Virus record (IMG/VR): IMGVR_UViG_3300023174_000040
Location: 62,001-126,000 of that record
Strand: one strand, 5' to 3'
Length of the DNA stretch: 64,000 bases
Under the pieces are notes generated by a model. That model was not told the origin of the DNA and made no database searches. It was given only the letters and a program-made list of their open reading frames with translations. Positions 14,211 through 57,682 of this stretch are shown piece after piece. Both the position numbers and the translations under genes were made by a program. The first letter of the stretch is position 1. Each line of letters opens with the position of its first letter.

Positions 14211-16397
14211 ATGAAGATCAACACGAACGGTTCTAATCTCAAGACTAATAACTTTAATGCCGAATCCATTGAATTTGGAATTGGCGATGTTAGCACTATC
14301 ATTGATATCCTCCGAAATAGGCTTTATGCAAATCCTATTAGGACCTTGACCCAGGAATATCTTTGCAATGCACGGGATAGCCACCGTGATTCAGGCAATA
14401 GTGATACTCCGGTTTCTGTTACGCTTCCCACCAAGTTGGATAGCGTTCTTAAGATCAGGGATTATGGTACTGGTCTTAGTCCGGAACGTGTCAAGGATGT
14501 TTTCGTCAATTATGGAAGCAGCACAAAACGTGCCGATAATGTCCAAACTGGTGGTTTCGGTATCGGAGCCAAAAGTGCGTGGGCATACACCGATAGTTTT
14601 ACCATTCTTAGTTACTACAATGGTAAGCTTCGTTCATATATTGCCCATACCGGCAAGAATAGCAATGGTACTCTTGAACTCATTAGTGAGGATGACACCA
14701 ATGAACCCAATGGTGTCGAAGTTCAGATTCCAATTCGTGAGTCCGATATTGAACAGTTTGTCTATGCTGTTTATCGATGCACTTTCTTTTGGGATGTAAA
14801 GCCGGAATTGAAGGGAATCACCAAACTGGAGATTCCTGCTTCTTGGCTAGATTCTAGCAAGAATATTTCATTCAAGAACGGCAATTGGTTTATCCTTCAT
14901 AAGGATGATTTCATCAAGCGTCTTTTTGATTCTTATCACGCTGACATCTTTGTCCTTATTGATAAGATCCCATATAGCATCAATAAATTTGCATCTCATG
15001 AACTTTCTGCCAATGTAAATGCTCTCAGGAATTCTTCATATGCAACTCATATGAGTTTTGTTGAAGTTGATAACGGAATTCTTGAAATCAGTGCTACTCG
15101 TGAAAGTGTTAGCGACAAGGATGATAGCAAGAAGAAGGTAAATGATATTTGCGGTGAGGCCATCAAGAGTCTTGTATCTTGTGTTGATGATGAACTTGGC
15201 AAGGATTTTGCCACTATTGAAGAATATATCAAGTTCTACTTTAGTGTGAAGTGTATCTTTAACTTTGCATCACTTCCAACAAAGATTGAGTTTACCTTCA
15301 AGAAGGGTGGTTTTGATTATAAGTATAATAGCGGTCGTCTTGTTTCTACGAGTTTTGATGGTTGCCGTATCAATAAGTATCACCTCAAGCAACAGAAAAC
15401 TCGAAGCGTATTGAAGATTGAGGAAAACCATCCTATTGAGATTGATCAAGCCTTGAAGTCTTGTTTTATTCTTGATGATGGTCGAAACCCAAGATATACT
15501 ATCAAAGAAAAGATCAAGAAGTATTTTGCGGATAACCAGAGTGTTACTGCGGTATATTGCATCGAAGGTTATAACACCGATCAGCAAAAGCGTTTCACAG
15601 AACATCTTGGTGCTAAATATATGCTTGATCTTCCCCACAACAGGGTGAGTTACAAGCAAAAGAGAGAGGCTGGCAAGATTAGTTATCGGGAGATTATGCT
15701 TAGTAGTGCCTACAGCAGCAAGAAATTGGCTTCTGGCACTAAGAAGGATGTTACTCTCGATGAAATCGAAAGTTCATCTAATGAATTCGTTGTCGTTCCT
15801 TTCTCGGGCGACGAAATGTATCACGATGAAACTTTTGAAGATAATGTCAAGTTTATCATCAATCACGGCAAATATACCGTGATCAAGTGTTCTAAGAAGG
15901 ATTACGCCTTGATCGTTGGTTCTGCAGACAATGTTCATACTTACGAAGATGTAATTGAGAGTTTTCCTGATTATATCGAAGTGGATGATAAGGTTATTGA
16001 GAACTTTGTTTATCGTCAAGCAAGCAACACTCTTGATTTTATGAGGAAGTTCATTGATAGGGTCGAATGTCCCAAACTCAGGGAATACTTTGAAATCAAG
16101 GGTGGAATCAAGGAAACGGGTAGGGGCGGAATTCCGCCTGCTGCTCGTGCGGATATCCCCGACCGTATCATCAGCCTCTACCCACAGTATGCCACAATTA
16201 ATGGCAATCTTGATAAGATGAATAAATTGGAGAATGAAATCAACTCAAAGTATCCGCTTCTGAGGTGCATCTCGACCGGCATGAATTATGGTTATGGATA
16301 TTATGGTCACGGTCATGATCGTGATGAGGTTGGCCGTAAGAATAAGGAAATGAATGATCTTGTATTCTATATCAATAATAAGTCCAAGGTGAACTAA
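14211..16397 (+). CDS. rIIA: rIIA-like protein with an N-terminal GHKL (HSP90-like) ATPase domain
   Basis: LYANPIRTLTQEYLCNARDSH, IRDYGTGL, GGFGIGAKS, NGVEVQIP. Confidence 0.8.
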   Translation: MKINTNGSNLKTNNFNAESIEFGIGDVSTIIDILRNRLYANPIRTLTQEYLCNARDSHRDSGNSDTPVSVTLPTKLDSVLKIRDYGTGLSPERVKDVFVNYGSSTKRADNVQTGGFGIGAKSAWAYTDSFTILSYYNGKLRSYIAHTGKNSNGTLELISEDDTNEPNGVEVQIPIRESDIEQFVYAVYRCTFFWDVKPELKGITKLEIPASWLDSSKNISFKNGNWFILHKDDFIKRLFDSYHADIFVLIDKIPYSINKFASHELSANVNALRNSSYATHMSFVEVDNGILEISATRESVSDKDDSKKKVNDICGEAIKSLVSCVDDELGKDFATIEEYIKFYFSVKCIFNFASLPTKIEFTFKKGGFDYKYNSGRLVSTSFDGCRINKYHLKQQKTRSVLKIEENHPIEIDQALKSCFILDDGRNPRYTIKEKIKKYFADNQSVTAVYCIEGYNTDQQKRFTEHLGAKYMLDLPHNRVSYKQKREAGKISYREIMLSSAYSSKKLASGTKKDVTLDEIESSSNEFVVVPFSGDEMYHDETFEDNVKFIINHGKYTVIKCSKKDYALIVGSADNVHTYEDVIESFPDYIEVDDKVIENFVYRQASNTLDFMRKFIDRVECPKLREYFEIKGGIKETGRGGIPPAARADIPDRIISLYPQYATINGNLDKMNKLENEINSKYPLLRCISTGMNYGYGYYGHGHDRDEVGRKNKEMNDLVFYINNKSKVN

Positions 16398-28541: not shown

Positions 28542-28818
28542 GGCCCAGTAGCTCAATTGGATAAGAGCAACAGCCTTCGTGAAATAGGAGTGCTTAAAGA
28601 GAAATCTTTAATGTAGAATCGCTTAAATTCGGTGAAGGCTTAACTGCTAATACCGAGCCAAGCCTAAGCAATTAGGAAGGTGTAGAGACTTAACAGGCGA
28701 CACCTAAAGTTGAAAGACAATGGTGAAGATAAAGTCCAGACCACAAACAGTAATGGTAGTGAAAACTATAGTGGTACCGCTAAGCTGTAGGTTCCAAGTT
28801 CGATCCTTGGCTGGGTCA
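28542..28818 (+). tRNA. tRNA-Arg(UCU) interrupted by a group I intron
   Basis: Exons 28542-28577 and 28780-28818 join into a cloverleaf (GGCCCAG/CTGGGTC, ACAGC-CTTCTAA-GCTGT, TTCGATC loop). Confidence 0.9.
28578..28779 (+). ncRNA. group I self-splicing intron (202 nt, no ORF)
   Basis: Core motifs aaattcggtgaa, aataccgagcc, gtagagact, aaagtcc; terminal G; P1 CTTC/GGAG with a U-G wobble at U28577. Confidence 0.9.
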
Positions 28819-28876
28819 TTTTGTTTTGTTTTGAAAAAGAGCAAAGTATTTACTATTAATATTTTGTAGTAATCAC

Positions 28877-29016
28877 ACAAGAGTAGCTCAACGGGTAGAG
28901 CGTTTGACTGTCCAAAGCCACTGAATTGAAGCTCAAAAAAGCTGGCAATCTATCGGGTTCAATACCCAAACAGTGGATTAATCAAATGGTTGCAAGTTCG
29001 AATCTTGCCTCTTGTG
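28877..29016 (+). tRNA. tRNA-Asn(GUU) with a 67-nt anticodon-loop insertion
   Basis: ACAAGAG/CTCTTGT acceptor with G73, D- and T-arms intact; removing 28911-28977 restores TTTGA-CTGTTAA-TCAAA. Confidence 0.8.
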
Positions 29017-29017
29017 C

Positions 29018-44392: not shown

Positions 44393-44492
44393 GGTGAATG
44401 TAGCGTAGTGGTAGCGTGAGGGAAGTTCCGAACTGCGACAGCAGAGTAGGCAAACAAATGCCCTTGTGGTGGTTCGATTCCACCCATTCGCC
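44393..44492 (+). tRNA. tRNA-His-like gene with an aberrant, expanded anticodon arm
   Basis: G-1:C73, GTGAATG/CATTCGC acceptor and GGTGG-TTCGATT-CCACC T-arm; the anticodon loop is replaced by about 38 nt with no GTG. Confidence 0.6.
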
Positions 44493-44511
44493 CTGACCAA
44501 AGAAAAAAACA

Positions 44512-51381: not shown

Positions 51382-51466
51382 GCTGAAGTGGCGAAACTGG
51401 CGAAACGCAGGGGACTTAAAATCCCCCACATTAGAAACACTGCGGGTTCGAATCCCGCCTTCAGCA
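51382..51466 (+). tRNA. tRNA-Leu(UAA)
   Basis: GCTGAAG/CTTCAGC acceptor, GGGGA-CTTAAAA-TCCCC anticodon arm, long variable arm, TTCGAAT loop. Confidence 0.95.
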
Positions 51467-51482
51467 CTGTAAATAAAAACAA

Positions 51483-51842
51483 GGGGGCGTAAAGGTATCG
51501 ACTGGATAAAAAGATTTATAACTGCATGTCGAGGTTAGTCGAACGGCCTCGTTAAAATTCGACTAAAGCCTTAACTGGCACTGTTAATTACGCAATGGCT
51601 GCCTGATAAAAAGGGCAACCACGAATCTAGGAAGCTAATGTTGGATGCGTCCTAAAATTCGTCGTCAAATCCAACTGGTTTTCTGGTGGTCAACTTACCT
51701 GAAAACGAGAAAATAGGTTGAGAGATTTTAAAGACTTTTGTTTATTGTAATCTTTAAAATCTATTTGAACAATAAACCAAACATGTGAAGAAGTTATATT
51801 TTGATTTATTTCAGGACAGGAGTTCGACTCTCCTCGCCTCCA
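51483..51842 (+). ncRNA. ssrA: tmRNA; tag (A)GTVNYAMAA*
   Basis: 5' GGGGGCG pairs with 3' CGCCTCC-A, G-U at position 3, T-arm caggag-ttcgact-ctcct; tag ORF ggc act gtt aat tac gca atg gct gcc tga. Confidence 0.92.
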
Positions 51843-51867
51843 TTTATAATTTCAACTAAAGGAAAAC

Positions 51868-55786: not shown

Positions 55787-56116
55787 ATGAACGATATGCT
55801 AAAAGAAAAAATAAGTGAAAAGCCAGTCAGGATGATTGAAAAGGCTTGCTATTTCAATCAAATGAGGTCAGATGGAGACACTTGGCGTATTCATGGCGTT
55901 GTGGATGGAACGGAATTGATGCCTAGTCGCCCAATCGGTTTCGATAAAGATAAAAATATATTCGAAACCAAGAACACAATTTACAAGGTTGTTTCTTGGG
56001 GTACTATGACCAAGTGCATTGACGAAGAATTCTGGAAGCAAGTAGAAGCTGATATTAAAGAGATTAGGCAGCGACTTAATAGCTACCACAATTTAAAAAG
56101 GTTCAGTCTTGATTAA
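55787..56116 (+). CDS. hypothetical phage protein
   Basis: IFETKNTIYKV motif. Confidence 0.65.
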   Translation: MNDMLKEKISEKPVRMIEKACYFNQMRSDGDTWRIHGVVDGTELMPSRPIGFDKDKNIFETKNTIYKVVSWGTMTKCIDEEFWKQVEADIKEIRQRLNSYHNLKRFSLD

Positions 56117-56762
56117 GATTATCAAAGAAATTGTTTCAAAAGAAACTCATTGCTATGTTGCCGTAAGCATGGGTGTCGATAGCGTATCTTCTTTATTTTG
56201 GTTGAGAAGCAAGGGATACAACATTACTCCATTGCACTTTAATCATAATCTAAGAGAACAGAACCATGCCATGGAAAATAAGTTCCATGAACTTTGTGGT
56301 AAATTAGGATTAAAAGGTATTGTGGGCAGAGGTGAAAACTTAAAAACAGAAAAAGATTGCAGAGATGCCCGCTTAAATTTTTATAAAGAGGTTGTGGATT
56401 ACGAAGGTTATGTAATCACTGCTCATCATCTCAATGATTATGTGGAAAGCTATTTAATTAATTGTTTTCGTGGACAACCCAATCACAATCCTTTTGAATT
56501 AATTAGCGAGTTCGATGGATTCAAGATCATCCATCCTTTTCTATTAAGTAAGAAAAAAGATTTTCAAGAGTACGTTGACAGGAATAAATGGAACTGCTAT
56601 ACTGTGGAGGACGAAACCAATAAGGTTGTCAAAGGAAGCAGAAGAAATTGGATTCGTCAAATAATCATTCCAGAAATGAAAAAACAAAAGTTAAGTCTAG
56701 AAAAATATTGTTCAAGGAGAATTGAAAAGAACTTGAAGAATAAGACGGTAATTCTAGACTAG
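56109..56762 (+). CDS. tilS: tRNA(Ile)-lysidine synthetase, catalytic domain only
   Basis: VAVSMGVDS (PP-loop), HFNHNLR, RDARLNF, ITAHHLNDYVESYL, HPFL, EDETN, RNWIR. Confidence 0.9.
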   Translation: MIKIIKEIVSKETHCYVAVSMGVDSVSSLFWLRSKGYNITPLHFNHNLREQNHAMENKFHELCGKLGLKGIVGRGENLKTEKDCRDARLNFYKEVVDYEGYVITAHHLNDYVESYLINCFRGQPNHNPFELISEFDGFKIIHPFLLSKKKDFQEYVDRNKWNCYTVEDETNKVVKGSRRNWIRQIIIPEMKKQKLSLEKYCSRRIEKNLKNKTVILD

Positions 56763-56778
56763 CACAGTTGGTTAATTT

Positions 56779-57042
56779 CCGAAGGTAGCAAAACGGTTAA
56801 TGCAACAAACTCATGAATTTTCGTGCCATACGATTGGAAACTTCGTATGGGATGTCGTCAAATTCGGTGAAACCTAAATGCGTGAGCATATGGCAATGCC
56901 GAGCGAAGCCCGTAAGGGAACGTGTAGAGACTTAACGGCGACCACCTAAATCGTAAGATATGGTGAAGACAAAGTCCAAGGAGTGGTGAAAATCACACAA
57001 ACTTGAATTTGTAGACTGTGGGTTCGAATCCCACCCTTCGGA
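56779..57042 (+). tRNA. tRNA(CAU), probably Ile2, interrupted by a group I intron
   Basis: Exons 56779-56814 and 57006-57042 give CCGAAGG/CCTTCGG-A and ACAAA-CTCATAA-TTTGT; lies 16 nt after tilS. Confidence 0.88.
56815..57005 (+). ncRNA. group I self-splicing intron (191 nt, no ORF)
   Basis: aaattcggtgaa, caatgccgagc, gtagagact, aaagtcc; terminal G; P1 CATGAA/TTCGTG with a U-G wobble at the 5' splice site. Confidence 0.9.
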
Positions 57043-57046
57043 CGTA

Positions 57047-57087
57047 ACACGAGGCCGCTTGACAATATCAAGCGGCCTCGTGTCTTT
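57047..57087 (+). terminator. intrinsic terminator
   Basis: 16-bp inverted repeat acacgaggccgcttga / tcaagcggcctcgtgt followed by tttt. Confidence 0.8.
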
Positions 57088-57205
57088 TAATAGCTCTTAA
57101 GGACATAAATTATGATTTGATTTCATAATTTATATAGTATTTAGCCCTCCATTTTATGCGTTGTATTATACTTGAAAAACTTACCACCCAAGCTATAATA
57201 AATCC

Positions 57206-57682
57206 ATGTCTCAAAAAAAAATACAAACTGAAGAACCTGATGAACACTGGTCTTTTTTAGATTTTAAAGATAAAGTTGTTTTGGATTTGGGTTGTGGCAA
57301 ATTTTATTCATCAATATCCACCGCCCAGTGGTTTTTGAATAAAGGCGCACTTAAGGTTATTGGTGTAGATTTAAGTAAAGAAAATATTGATAACGATAGG
57401 TTTGTATCTTATGCCAAGGCAATAAGATCCTCAAAAGATCTGGAATATTTTTTAAAATATGAGCCAGAAGTAATTAAGTGTGATATAGAGGGTGCCGAGA
57501 TATACTTTAGAGATATTCCCTCTTTGCCTTCTGTCAAGCAAATCGCTTTTGAGTATCACTGTCCTGCTACAAAGAAGGTTTGCGAAGAATCTTTCATTAG
57601 ATGGGGTTTTGAAAACATAGTTCAGTACCAACTTTTTAACGAGAGTACGGACAGAATTGGAGTATACTATGCTTCCAAATAA
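57206..57682 (+). CDS. class I SAM-dependent methyltransferase-like protein
   Basis: VLDLGCG, VIGVD, IKCDIEGAE. Confidence 0.7.
   Translation: MSQKKIQTEEPDEHWSFLDFKDKVVLDLGCGKFYSSISTAQWFLNKGALKVIGVDLSKENIDNDRFVSYAKAIRSSKDLEYFLKYEPEVIKCDIEGAEIYFRDIPSLPSVKQIAFEYHCPATKKVCEESFIRWGFENIVQYQLFNESTDRIGVYYASK

What the first reader, a model, noticed from the sequence alone, without database searches (positions are those of the whole stretch)
56109..57042. tilS immediately followed by an intron-containing tRNA(CAU): a self-contained AUA-decoding cassette
Seen: a minimal TilS ends 16 nt before a tRNA with anticodon CAT, split after position 36 by a group I intron whose core closely resembles the tRNA-Arg intron. 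Established: TilS converts C34 to lysidine so the tRNA reads AUA as Ile, and position 36 is the known site of the Azoarcus tRNA-Ile intron. Inference: the phage supplies both enzyme and substrate, and splicing must precede modification, which could act as a timing gate.
Basis: partly seen in the sequence, partly recalled or inferred. Interest (0 to 1): 0.65.

Follow-up and report, generated by a model that had tools for sequence, protein, structure and literature searches.

The report
Phage TilS plus intron-split tRNA-Ile2 cassette
A large freshwater phage carries, as one small unit, the enzyme TilS and a CAU-anticodon tRNA that together should read the isoleucine codon AUA, its commonest isoleucine codon; the tRNA gene is split by a self-splicing intron of the type known from beta-proteobacterial tRNA-Ile genes, a kind of intron I found no report of in phage tRNA genes.

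Summary
A 217-aa TilS with only the N-terminal catalytic domain (56109-56762) ends 16 nt before a tRNA(CAU) (56779-57042). A 191-nt group I intron (56815-57005) splits that tRNA between U36 and A37, and a strong terminator hairpin follows.

The cassette reading is well supported:
- tilS followed by tRNA(CAU) is conserved in 12 of 14 related jumbo-phage contigs.
- The same arrangement recurs in a second TilS lineage only 25-28% identical.
- The tRNA has G3-C70 and no initiator features.
- AUA makes up 46% of the phage's Ile codons, yet tilS genes avoid it.

The intron belongs to the Azoarcus-type tRNA-Ile family of Betaproteobacteria (70-81% identity). It is only 56% identical to the phage's own tRNA-Arg intron.

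The "timing gate" idea is not supported. Most orthologous cassettes have no intron, and two relatives carry a different intron at 33/34, so the intron looks like a mobile passenger. 

Splicing, lysidine formation and Ile charging remain untested, and the host is unknown. 

New points: a conserved phage tilS-tRNA-Ile2 module, and IC3 introns in many phage tRNA genes (at least 119 viral contigs).

The parts
56109..56762 (+). tilS: 217-aa tRNA(Ile)-lysidine synthetase with the N-terminal PP-loop catalytic domain only. The PP-loop reads SMGVDS. The TTG start overlaps the end of the upstream ORF (55787-56116) by 8 nt.
   Evidence: TIGR02432 scores 96.6 bits against a cut-off of 93.6; PF01171 E 2.9e-25. 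It aligns to residues 19-222 of Aquifex TilS 1wy5 and keeps the HFNHxLR, TAHHLND, EDETN and RNWIR motifs. SMGxDS is conserved in 14 related contigs. ATA supplies only 1 of its 17 Ile codons.
56763..56778 (+). 16-nt spacer between the tilS stop codon and tRNA position 1 (the 5' leader of the tRNA).
   Evidence: Read directly from the sequence.
56779..56814 (+). tRNA(CAU) exon 1, positions 1-36. It holds the 5' acceptor strand CCGAAGG, the D arm, the 5' anticodon-stem strand ACAAA and loop bases C32 U33 C34 A35 U36.
   Evidence: ARAGORN with introns allowed. ARAGORN reads the locally joined exons as a 73-nt cloverleaf. Orthologues without an intron are in L011, L015, L017 and others.
56815..57005 (+). 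191-nt group I intron (IC3, Azoarcus tRNA-Ile type) with no ORF.
- Guide sequence GUG at 56823-56825 pairs with C34 A35 U36 (56812-56814) to form P1, with a U.G pair at the splice site.
- GAAUU at 56815-56819 can pair with exon 2 bases 57006-57010 (P10).
- P2: 56826-56833 with 56843-56850.
- P3: 56854-56859 with 56937-56942.
- P4: 56864-56867 with 56899-56902.
- P6: 56903-56905 with 56921-56923.
- P8: 56943-56946 with 56962-56965.
- P9: 56983-56987 with 56992-56996.
- The terminal G is at 57005.
   Evidence: RF00028 scores 59.2 bits, E 1.8e-12. It is 70-81% identical to beta-proteobacterial tRNA(CAU) introns. RNAalifold on 32 unique introns recovers these helices with compensatory changes, and the window sequence pairs at nearly every position of them. 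P1 and P10 are read from the sequence.
57006..57042 (+). tRNA(CAU) exon 2, positions 37-73. It holds A37 A38, the 3' anticodon-stem strand UUUGU, a 5-nt variable loop, the T arm, the 3' acceptor strand CCUUCGG and discriminator A73. No CCA is encoded.
57047..57090 (+). Intrinsic-terminator-like hairpin (16-bp stem, 10 G-C pairs, loop of 5) followed by CTTTTAA. It closes the tilS-tRNA unit.
   Evidence: five terminator-like sites were found in the region against 1.6 expected, and this is by far the strongest.
56575..56603 (+). Sigma-70-like site inside tilS (TTGACA-17-TATACT with TG), about 175 nt upstream of the tRNA. It might drive the tRNA on its own; this rests on consensus match only.
   Evidence: 11 of 12 matches, but promoter-like sites are not enriched in the region (11 found, 12.6 expected).

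Best explanation
This is a two-gene unit that lets a jumbo phage supply its own AUA decoding.

Shown from sequence:
- The window lies in a 323-kb IMG/VR virus record of about 35% G+C.
- A domain-minimal TilS and a tRNA with anticodon CAU sit 16 nt apart on one strand and are followed by a strong terminator hairpin.
- The tRNA gene is split between positions 36 and 37 by a complete ORF-less IC3 group I ribozyme.

Inferred sequence of events:
1. The unit is transcribed, probably as one RNA.
2. The intron folds. Its guide GUG pairs with C34-A35-U36 (P1), and it splices itself out with guanosine, joining ...CUCAU to AAUUUGU... and restoring a 7-nt anticodon loop.
3. Host enzymes (RNase P, a 3' nuclease, the CCA-adding enzyme) finish the ends.
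4. The phage TilS uses ATP and lysine to turn C34 into lysidine. It lacks the acceptor-binding C-terminal domains, so it presumably reads only the anticodon arm.
5. The modified tRNA is charged by IleRS rather than MetRS and reads AUA rather than AUG.

Why the phage needs it: AUA is the phage's commonest Ile codon (46% of Ile codons, about 36 per 1000 codons). Only its most optimised genes avoid it, such as the major capsid protein, a ligase and a topoisomerase-like protein. This implies that the host reads AUA poorly.

The intron is best read as a mobile passenger. It came from the gene pool of beta-proteobacterial tRNA-Ile introns and costs the phage nothing because it splices. It is not a built-in regulator.
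For: TilS identity.

tRNA and intron anatomy.

Conserved linkage:
- In the SMGxDS TilS clade (50-98% identity), 12 of 14 contigs have a tRNA(CAU) within about 1 kb downstream of tilS.
- Two contigs of another TilS lineage (L228, L232; 25-28% identity; 215-aa NTD-only TilS) have a tRNA(CAU) with a 201-nt intron of the same family 20 nt after tilS.

Ile2 rather than Met identity:
- G3-C70 is present in 14 of the 15 tilS-linked tRNAs. Silva et al. (PMC1635315) give this pair as a complete negative discriminator of tRNA-Met and tRNA-fMet.
- Initiator features are absent: 1-72 is paired, the D stem has C11-G24 and A12-U23, and the anticodon stem is A/U-rich.
- A37, A38 and A73 are present.
- Several relatives also have C4-G69 and C5-G68.
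- The intron and its insertion site are those of beta-proteobacterial tRNA(CAU) genes whose exons carry G3-C70, C4-G69 and C5-G68.

Demand for AUA:
- ATA supplies 3160 of 6868 Ile codons.
- The other phage tRNAs read AGA, UUA, AAA, GAA, CAA and GGA.
- Genes that avoid ATA also avoid AGA, UUA, AAA and GGA. They include the Gp23-like capsid protein.

tilS avoids AUA:
- The window gene uses ATA for 1 of 17 Ile codons while using AGA 7 of 12 and TTA 9 of 19.
- Over 15 relatives, tilS uses ATA for 31 of 241 Ile codons against 370 of 1159 in flanking ORFs.

The intron as passenger:
- Within one tRNA lineage (acceptor stem CCGAnnG) three states occur: none (L017), 33/34 (L014, L018) and 36/37 (window, L016). 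Each intron's guide sequence matches its own site.
- In L014 a free-standing HNH gene lies beside the intron-bearing tRNA.
Against: - Transcription, splicing and modification are therefore all inferred.
- The PP-loop reads SMGVDS instead of the canonical SGGxDS. It is conserved in the clade, but its activity is untested.
- The enzyme has no C-terminal domain, so how it would tell tRNA-Ile2 from tRNA-Met is unknown.
- The window tRNA lacks the E. coli IleRS/TilS elements C4-G69, C5-G68, U12-A23 and C29-G41. It shares A5-U68 with E. coli tRNA-Met (PMC9976931).
- The host is unknown. A beta-proteobacterial host is only suggested by the intron's relatives. My recollection (not tested) is that a tmRNA tag starting with Gly is more typical of Bacteroidota.
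- More distant phage TilS genes (PA5oct, RsoM2USA, LR756502) have no adjacent tRNA.
Confidence: 0.72

Rival explanations
1. Timing gate. The intron delays supply of the TilS substrate, so that AUA decoding, and with it translation of AUA-rich genes, switches on at a set time.
For: In the precursor the anticodon is locked in P1, so modification cannot precede splicing (read from the sequence). The genome holds gene classes that are AUA-free and AUA-rich.
Against: - Most orthologous cassettes have no intron, and two have a different intron at another site.
- From my own knowledge, introns of this family splice fast in vitro. PMC13168695 reports efficient self-splicing of the Azoarcus precursor at 37 C.
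- The AUA-poor class includes the major capsid protein, a late gene, so the classes follow expression level rather than time.
Confidence: 0.05
2. The tRNA is an ordinary elongator tRNA-Met. The phage TilS acts on the host's tRNA-Ile2, or does something else, and the adjacency is incidental.
For: ARAGORN labels it Met from the anticodon. A5-U68 matches an E. coli MetRS element. The distant phage TilS genes checked (PA5oct, RsoM2USA, LR756502, LR745206) stand alone.
Against: - It has G3-C70 and C2-G71, the opposite of the Met pairs G2-C71 and C3-G70.
- Linkage to tilS is conserved in two TilS lineages.
- The intron family and its site are those of bacterial tRNA-Ile2 genes.
- AUG is half as frequent as AUA in this phage, so an extra tRNA-Met would bring little.
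Confidence: 0.07
3. Counter-defence spare part. The cassette replaces host tRNA-Ile2 that a host defence nuclease, or phage-induced shut-off, destroys during infection. Codon bias is secondary.
For: Phage tRNAs as replacements for host tRNAs compromised during infection is an idea cited in the jumbo-phage literature (PMC12619734; PMC13096335 abstract). Bringing its own TilS would make the replacement independent of the host.
Against: - No nuclease or defence context is seen at this locus.
- The phage tRNA set matches its A-ending codon bias across seven families, which codon supply explains without further assumptions.
- This reading does not exclude the best explanation.
Confidence: 0.12
4. 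The intron acts as DNA-level immunity. It interrupts the target of a free-standing homing endonuclease that cuts intron-less tRNA(CAU) alleles of co-infecting phages, so the intron persists through 'collaborative homing'.
For: In L014 an HNH endonuclease ORF lies directly beside the intron-bearing tRNA. Presence or absence of the intron is patchy among close relatives.
Against: No endonuclease gene lies next to the window's cassette. This reading explains why the intron persists, not what the cassette does.
Confidence: 0.2

Closest known systems
[quoted passage not shown]
   Same: - Same host gene type, tRNA(CAU).
- Same insertion site, after U36: 40 of 40 bacterial hits read CTCAT|...G|AA.
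- Same GUG guide pairing with CAU, and same P9 sequence.
- 70-81% identity over about 190 nt, similar size (191 nt against 202-215 nt), and no ORF.
- PMC13168695 describes the Azoarcus intron as 205 nt, in the anticodon loop, and self-splicing.
   Different: - It sits in a phage genome, in tRNA exons unlike the bacterial ones (acceptor stem CCGAAGG).
- It is more A/T-rich (46% G+C) and has shorter peripheral helices.
- No Azoarcus sequence was available from a tool, so my direct comparison with Azoarcus itself rests on memory. The tool comparison is with other Betaproteobacteria, which include Rhodocyclales.
Phage and chlorovirus TilS (Pseudomonas phages MIJ3 and PA5oct; 39 of 41 chloroviruses)
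   Same: Both are virus-encoded TilS homologues in A/T-rich viruses that also carry tRNA genes. In chloroviruses the gene is read as boosting AUA decoding (PMC6892783; bioRxiv 10.1101/2020.07.06.190819). PA5oct TilS is also about 200 aa with the N-terminal domain only, and is 29% identical.
   Different: In PA5oct, RsoM2USA and the huge-phage records LR756502 and LR745206 there is no tRNA within 3 kb of tilS. Here enzyme and substrate form one conserved unit, the tRNA carries an intron, and the PP-loop reads SMGxDS.
Bacterial TilS type I (E. coli, Geobacillus) and type II (Aquifex, Mycobacterium)
   Same: The N-terminal PP-loop domain and the TilS-specific motifs are shared.
   Different: Type I has CTD1 and CTD2, and type II has CTD1 (PMC12514573). 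The phage protein stops at the end of the N-terminal domain, so it falls outside both described types.
Cyanobacterial and plastid tRNA-Leu(UAA) and tRNA-fMet group I introns
   Same: They are IC3 ribozymes in tRNA anticodon loops and share the same core blocks.
   Different: The tRNA and insertion site differ. Viral contigs also carry many tRNA-Leu(UAA) introns of this kind.

Membership tests
TilS (tRNA(Ile)-lysidine synthetase) | N-terminal PP-loop ATPase domain that reaches the curated TilS model cut-off | tested here: met
   TIGR02432 scores 96.6 bits against a cut-off of 93.6, covering profile positions 2-189 of 189. PF01171 scores 89.5 bits.
TilS (tRNA(Ile)-lysidine synthetase) | Canonical PP-loop motif SGGxDS | tested here: inconclusive
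   The motif reads SMGVDS. The G-to-M change is fixed in 14 related contigs, while more distant viral TilS keep SGGxDS. Its effect on ATP binding is unknown.
TilS (tRNA(Ile)-lysidine synthetase) | TilS-specific conserved blocks shared with solved enzymes (HxNHxLR, TAHHxxD..E, EDxTN, RNxxR) | tested here: met
   All are present in the alignment to 1wy5 and 1ni5 and invariant in alignment A1.
TilS (tRNA(Ile)-lysidine synthetase) | C-terminal tRNA-binding domain(s): CTD1 with or without CTD2, as in types I and II | tested here: not met
   The protein ends at residue 217, which matches the end of the Aquifex N-terminal domain. The tRNA and the terminator follow. The types are defined in PMC12514573.
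TilS (tRNA(Ile)-lysidine synthetase) | Forms lysidine at C34 of tRNA-Ile2 with ATP and lysine | not testable with these tools
   This needs an enzyme assay.
tRNA-Ile2 (anticodon CAU, lysidine at position 34) | Anticodon CAU in a 7-nt loop with U33, A37 and A38, plus discriminator A73 | tested here: met
   The joined loop reads CUCAUAA and position 73 is A.
tRNA-Ile2 (anticodon CAU, lysidine at position 34) | Not an initiator: no 1-72 mismatch, no A11-U24 or G12-C23, no three G-C pairs at the foot of the anticodon stem | tested here: met
   It has C1-G72, C11-G24 and A12-U23, and the anticodon stem is ACAAA/UUUGU. The criteria come from PMC1635315. For contrast, beta-proteobacterial initiators fetched begin CGCGGGG and have the GGG/CCC anticodon stem.
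tRNA-Ile2 (anticodon CAU, lysidine at position 34) | G3 or A3 with C70 or U70, the negative discriminator against tRNA-Met and tRNA-fMet | tested here: met
   G3-C70 is present in the window tRNA and in 14 of the 15 tilS-linked tRNAs. The rule comes from PMC1635315.
tRNA-Ile2 (anticodon CAU, lysidine at position 34) | C4-G69 and C5-G68, frequent in tRNA-Ile2 and TilS elements in E. coli | tested here: not met
   The window tRNA has A4-U69 and A5-U68. Relatives L011, L015 and L022 do have C4-G69 and C5-G68. This feature is frequent, not universal.
tRNA-Ile2 (anticodon CAU, lysidine at position 34) | Charged with Ile and reads AUA | not testable with these tools
   This needs aminoacylation and decoding assays. 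An isotype-specific covariance model (tRNAscan-SE 2.0 Ile2) was not on hand.
Group I intron, IC3, Azoarcus tRNA-Ile type | Matches the group I covariance model above its gathering score | tested here: met
   RF00028 scores 59.2 bits against 50, E 1.8e-12.
Group I intron, IC3, Azoarcus tRNA-Ile type | 5' exon ends in U paired with G of the guide sequence (P1); the intron ends in G | tested here: met
   CAU (56812-56814) pairs with GUG (56823-56825), with U36.G at the splice site. G at 57005 precedes A37. The junction restores the loop seen in intron-less orthologues.
Group I intron, IC3, Azoarcus tRNA-Ile type | Conserved P2-P9 architecture kept through compensatory changes | tested here: met
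   RNAalifold on 32 unique introns: P2 has 7 pairs with changes on both sides and P3 has 3, with others in P5, P6, P8 and P9. The window sequence forms standard pairs at nearly every position of these helices, the one exception being a G-A in a short P5 helix. The P7 strands GACU and AGUC are invariant.
Group I intron, IC3, Azoarcus tRNA-Ile type | Inserted between positions 36 and 37 of a tRNA(CAU) | tested here: met
   The site is the same as in 40 of 40 beta-proteobacterial members.
Group I intron, IC3, Azoarcus tRNA-Ile type | Self-splices with guanosine and Mg2+ | not testable with these tools

The most novel reading that the evidence does not exclude
The most novel reading has three parts.
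1. The NTD-only TilS and its neighbouring tRNA form an orthogonal enzyme-substrate pair. The enzyme reads only the anticodon arm of the phage tRNA.
2. This pair makes AUA decoding a resource under phage control. Most phage genes are AUA-rich (tail, baseplate, helicase: 60-80% of Ile codons). They would be translated well only once the cassette is expressed and the intron, which sequesters C34-U36 in P1, has spliced out. A set of AUA-free genes (capsid, ligase, topoisomerase-like) would not depend on it.
3. More broadly, IC3 introns moving between host and phage tRNA genes would be a widespread and overlooked class of phage mobile elements.
Probability: 0.12. Interest if true: 0.8.

Novelty: new variant of a known kind. 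Interest (0 to 1): 0.6.

Why it matters
- It gives a clean natural case of a virus carrying both a tRNA-modifying enzyme and its presumed substrate as one module. That makes the question of why phages carry TilS directly testable.
- It offers a set of about 200-aa TilS enzymes without acceptor-binding domains. These can be used to ask how tRNA-Ile2 is told apart from tRNA-Met by the anticodon arm alone.
- It shows that group I introns do occur in phage tRNA genes, and often (at least 119 viral contigs). A 2014 review noted that every phage group I intron then known lay in a protein-coding gene.
- The relatives form a natural series (no intron, intron at 33/34, intron at 36/37) in one orthologous tRNA. 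This is good material for studying intron mobility between hosts and phages.

Tried and rejected
- Reference elongator tRNA-Met: I tried to fetch it from five beta-proteobacterial genomes with a loop and T-loop pattern. The search returned only initiators and isolated 3' halves of tRNA-Ile2, so no local Met/Ile2 discriminant could be built.
- The E. coli identity sets for IleRS and MetRS do not separate the window tRNA cleanly.
- PHROGs holds no matching TilS family; the only hit was a weak QueC-like one.
- A gap-tolerant pairwise aligner gave inflated intron identities (shuffled control mean 0.73). I replaced it with MAFFT-column identities.
- I first read the AUA-poor gene class as 'early genes'. 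I rejected this because it includes the Gp23-like major capsid protein.
- A pattern drawn from the 67-nt tRNA insert found nothing in other viral contigs.
Exons and intron were searched by reference only. The joined form was examined only in local scripts for the cloverleaf. The database search with the joined tRNA was left out.
- No structure prediction was run, because the profile and PDB sequence matches already settle the fold.
Full report
**Where the window lies.** The window is bases 62001-126000 of a single 323,267-bp IMG/VR virus record. CheckV estimates it as 64% complete, and its G+C content is 30-38%. It is therefore a fragment of a jumbo phage, probably around 500 kb in full.

**Check of the observation.**
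- The ORF at 56109-56762 (+) has a TTG start and encodes 217 aa.
- It passes the curated cut-off of the TilS N-terminal-domain model: TIGR02432 scores 96.6 bits against 93.6, E 1.6e-27. It also matches PF01171 at E 2.9e-25.
- Its best solved relatives are the N-terminal domains of Aquifex (1wy5, residues 19-222 of 317), E. coli (1ni5) and Geobacillus (3a2k) TilS. The blocks HFNHxLR, TAHHLND, EDETN and RNWIR are shared.
- The protein ends where the N-terminal domain ends, and no C-terminal domain is encoded downstream. It is shorter than both described TilS types: type I has CTD1 and CTD2, and type II has CTD1 (PMC12514573).
- Its PP-loop reads SMGVDS rather than SGGxDS.
- Standard ARAGORN sees only a 3' fragment. 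With introns allowed it calls a tRNA(CAU) at 56779-57043 with a 191-nt intron.
- Rfam's group I model scores 59.2 bits (gathering score 50) at 56805-56998.
- ARAGORN's junction is 1 nt off. The group I rules (U before the 5' splice site, G as the last intron base) and the loop CTCATAA of intron-less orthologues fix the parts as follows: exon 1 is 56779-56814 (positions 1-36), the intron is 56815-57005, and exon 2 is 57006-57042 (A37 to A73).
- A hairpin with a 16-bp stem followed by a T-rich tail lies at 57047-57083 and closes the unit.

**Intron anatomy.**
- C34-A35-U36 (56812-56814) pair with GUG (56823-56825) to form P1, with U36.G at the splice site.
- GAAUU (56815-56819) can pair with the first five bases of exon 2 (P10).
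- RNAalifold on 32 unique related introns recovers P2, P3, P4, P5, P6, P8 and P9. Changes on both sides occur in 7 pairs of P2 and 3 pairs of P3, among others. The window sequence forms standard pairs at nearly every position of these helices.
- The P7 strands GACU and AGUC are invariant.
- There is no ORF in the intron.

**What the intron is related to.**
- A 30-nt pattern from P9 and the 3' end matched 40 stretches in 185,579 species genomes. All 40 are Betaproteobacteria, including Limnohabitans, Polynucleobacter, Comamonas, Massilia, Duganella, Limnobacter, Azonexus, Dechloromonas and Gulbenkiania.
- Every hit lies in a tRNA(CAU) gene. Where both junctions could be read, the intron is 202-215 nt and lies exactly after CTCAT and before AA.
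- These are the relatives of the Azoarcus tRNA-Ile intron, which is 205 nt, lies in the anticodon loop and self-splices (PMC13168695). Their exons have G3-C70, C4-G69 and C5-G68.
- The window intron is 70-81% identical to them. The best match is a Comamonas MAG at 81% over 189 columns. It is 87% identical to the intron in phage contig L016.
- It is only 56% identical to the tRNA-Arg intron of the same genome, with which it shares just the catalytic blocks.
- In the tree, the two phage introns sit inside an unresolved Burkholderiales group.
- I had no Azoarcus sequence from a tool. My impression that the P9 end is nearly the same as in Azoarcus rests on memory.

**Is the tRNA an Ile2 tRNA?** Four lines point that way.
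1. Sequence features. It has G3-C70. Silva et al. found this pair to exclude tRNA-Met and tRNA-fMet in 234 genomes (PMC1635315). It lacks every initiator feature, and it has A37, A38 and A73.
2. Linkage. In the TilS clade that shares SMGxDS (14 contigs, 50-98% identity), 12 have a tRNA(CAU) within about 1 kb downstream of tilS. Of the 15 tilS-linked tRNAs, 14 have G3-C70 and several also have C4-G69 and C5-G68. Two contigs of a different TilS lineage (L228, L232; 215 aa; canonical SGGxDS; 25-28% identity) have the same layout. There, tilS is followed after 20 nt by a tRNA(CAU) with a 201-nt intron of the same family.
3. Intron homology. The intron family and its site are those of bacterial tRNA-Ile2 genes.
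4. Demand. ATA is 46% of Ile codons and about 36 per 1000 codons, twice the frequency of ATG. For comparison, published figures are 0.6 to 16.8 per 1000 in bacteria (PMC12514573). I measured 4.8 per 1000 in the flanks of the 40 beta-proteobacterial tRNA genes.

The phage's other tRNAs read AGA, UUA, AAA, GAA, CAA and GGA. Against this reading, the window tRNA lacks the E. coli elements C4-G69, U12-A23 and C29-G41, and shares A5-U68 with E. coli tRNA-Met (PMC9976931). The identity is well supported but not proven.

**Codon-usage detail.**
- About 27 of 243 ORFs use ATA for fewer than 15% of their Ile codons. The same ORFs avoid AGA, UUA, AAA and GGA.
- They include a DNA ligase, a 728-aa HATPase_c/topoisomerase-like protein (0 of 61 Ile codons are ATA), an AAA ATPase with a VWA-metallopeptidase partner (0 of 28 and 0 of 33), and the Gp23-like major capsid protein (1 of 19).
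- Tail, baseplate and helicase genes use ATA for 60-80% of Ile codons.
- The classes therefore follow optimisation for expression, not early versus late timing. They imply that these codons are costly in the host.
- tilS is a special case. It avoids ATA (1 of 17) but not AGA (7 of 12) or TTA (9 of 19).
- Across 15 relatives, tilS uses ATA for 13% of Ile codons against 32% in flanking ORFs. This fits a gene that must be made before AUA decoding improves. The relatives are not independent samples, so it is a supporting hint only.

**The intron as passenger.**
- Within one orthologous tRNA lineage (acceptor stem CCGAnnG) there are three states. L017 has no intron. The window and L016 have the 36/37 intron.
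- L014 and L018 have a different 208-211-nt intron between U33 and C34. Its guide sequence GGU pairs with ACU at that site.
- Most other cassettes have no intron.
- In L014 an HNH endonuclease ORF lies right beside the interrupted tRNA.
- This pattern fits repeated invasion by mobile introns, not a conserved regulatory part, so the 'timing gate' idea has no support.
- That splicing must precede lysidine formation is a sound inference from P1, but it is a consequence rather than a demonstrated function.

**How common this is.**
- In 50 of the first 80 loci, ARAGORN places the core inside an intron-bearing tRNA. Most are tRNA-Leu(UAA); tRNA-Arg(UCU), CAU and others also occur. ARAGORN's anticodon calls for such genes are unreliable.
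- Fourteen viral contigs carry the Azoarcus-type P9 pattern.
- A 2014 review states that all phage group I introns known then were in protein-coding genes, despite the many phage tRNA genes (PMC3984707).
- A 2025 intron database reports viral introns as mostly subtype IA2 (PMC11835236).
- My literature searches found no report of group I introns in phage tRNA genes, nor of a tilS-tRNA module. The library is not complete.
- TilS itself has been reported in phages MIJ3 and PA5oct and in chloroviruses. In PA5oct, RsoM2USA and two huge-phage records no tRNA lies near tilS.

**Host.** The host is unknown. Three things suggest a freshwater beta-proteobacterium (Burkholderiales):
- the relatives of the intron;
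- the exons of L228 and L232, which closely resemble Burkholderiales tRNA-Ile2;
- the avoidance of ATA, AGA and TTA in optimised genes.

The phage tmRNA tag begins with Gly. From memory, that is more typical of Bacteroidota. I hold the host inference with low to moderate confidence.

**Limits.**
Searches were made exon by exon and for the intron, by reference. The joined form was used only in local scripts for the cloverleaf. The database search with the joined tRNA was left out.

**Verdict.**
- The cassette interpretation is well supported by comparative evidence (confidence about 0.7).
- The timing-gate addition is not supported.
- The parts belong to known families, except that the TilS is outside the two described domain types.
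- The arrangement, a conserved phage tilS-tRNA-Ile2 module with mobile IC3 introns in the tRNA, appears to be undescribed.

Noticed in passing
window 28542-28819: A tRNA-Arg(UCU) is split by a 202-nt group I intron (28578-28779; RF00028 scores 60.2 bits). By the terminal-G rule the intron lies between U34 and C35. In the P1 that Rfam aligns, the splice-site U seems to pair with A rather than G. Viral contigs L111, L121 and L124 carry similar tRNA-Arg(UCU) introns.
   Followed up: partly
window 28877-29017; L217 and L218 (minus strands): A tRNA carries a roughly 67-nt insert in its anticodon loop.
- The insert is almost invariant in two diverged relatives, while the tRNA's own stems differ.
- It folds as a three-way junction closed by CCACUG/CAGUGG, with one compensatory change in a hairpin.
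- It matches no Rfam family, is too small for a group I intron and is not a bulge-helix-bulge motif.
- A splice register of 35/36 gives GUU (Asn) in all three. A register of 36/37 gives Asp in the window but Tyr in the relatives.
- How it is removed, if it is removed at all, is unknown.
   Followed up: partly
window 44394-44493: A tRNA-Gly(UCC)-like gene has a 27-38-nt insert in the anticodon loop that includes the hairpin CUGC-GACA-GCAG. A match of the same length and score occurs in the 98%-related contig (G006:220665-220763).
   Followed up: no
window 51382-51845: A phage-encoded tRNA-Leu(UAA) is followed 16 nt later by a full tmRNA (RF00023 scores 139.6 bits; predicted tag GTVNYAMAA). tmRNA genes also lie near the tilS cassette in relatives L013, L019 and L020.
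   Followed up: no
whole record G000; e.g. window 14211-16397, G000 139439-142964 and 287484-292374: The genome has two codon-usage classes. About 11% of ORFs almost never use ATA, AGA, TTA, AAA or GGA, the codons read by the phage's own tRNAs. This class includes the Gp23-like capsid protein, a ligase, a topoisomerase-like protein and an AAA/VWA pair. Tail, baseplate and helicase genes use ATA for 60-80% of their Ile codons.
   Followed up: partly
viral contigs L048-L127 and further: The IC3 group I core is present in at least 119 IMG/VR contigs. It lies inside tRNA genes in at least 50 of the first 80 loci, mostly tRNA-Leu(UAA). I found no paper describing group I introns in phage tRNA genes.
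   Followed up: partly
L014 4430-5068 (minus strand): A free-standing 212-aa HNH endonuclease ORF lies about 20 nt downstream of the tRNA(CAU) that carries the 33/34 intron. It is a candidate for endonuclease-assisted intron spread.
   Followed up: no
L208, L211, L216 (beta-proteobacterial genomes G002-G004): Isolated 3' halves of tRNA-Ile2 (CTCATAATCC...CCCACCA) occur without a 5' half. They are probably duplicated attachment sites of integrated elements that target this tRNA gene.
   Followed up: no
window 57206-57682: A 158-aa ORF just after the terminator has a weak, sub-threshold SAM-methyltransferase signature (Methyltransf_31 and FtsJ-like; motif VLDLGCG). Whether it acts on RNA is unknown.
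   Followed up: no
G000:C1:172326-172414 (outside the window): ARAGORN calls a tRNA-Ser with the unusual anticodon ACU. I did not examine it.
   Followed up: no
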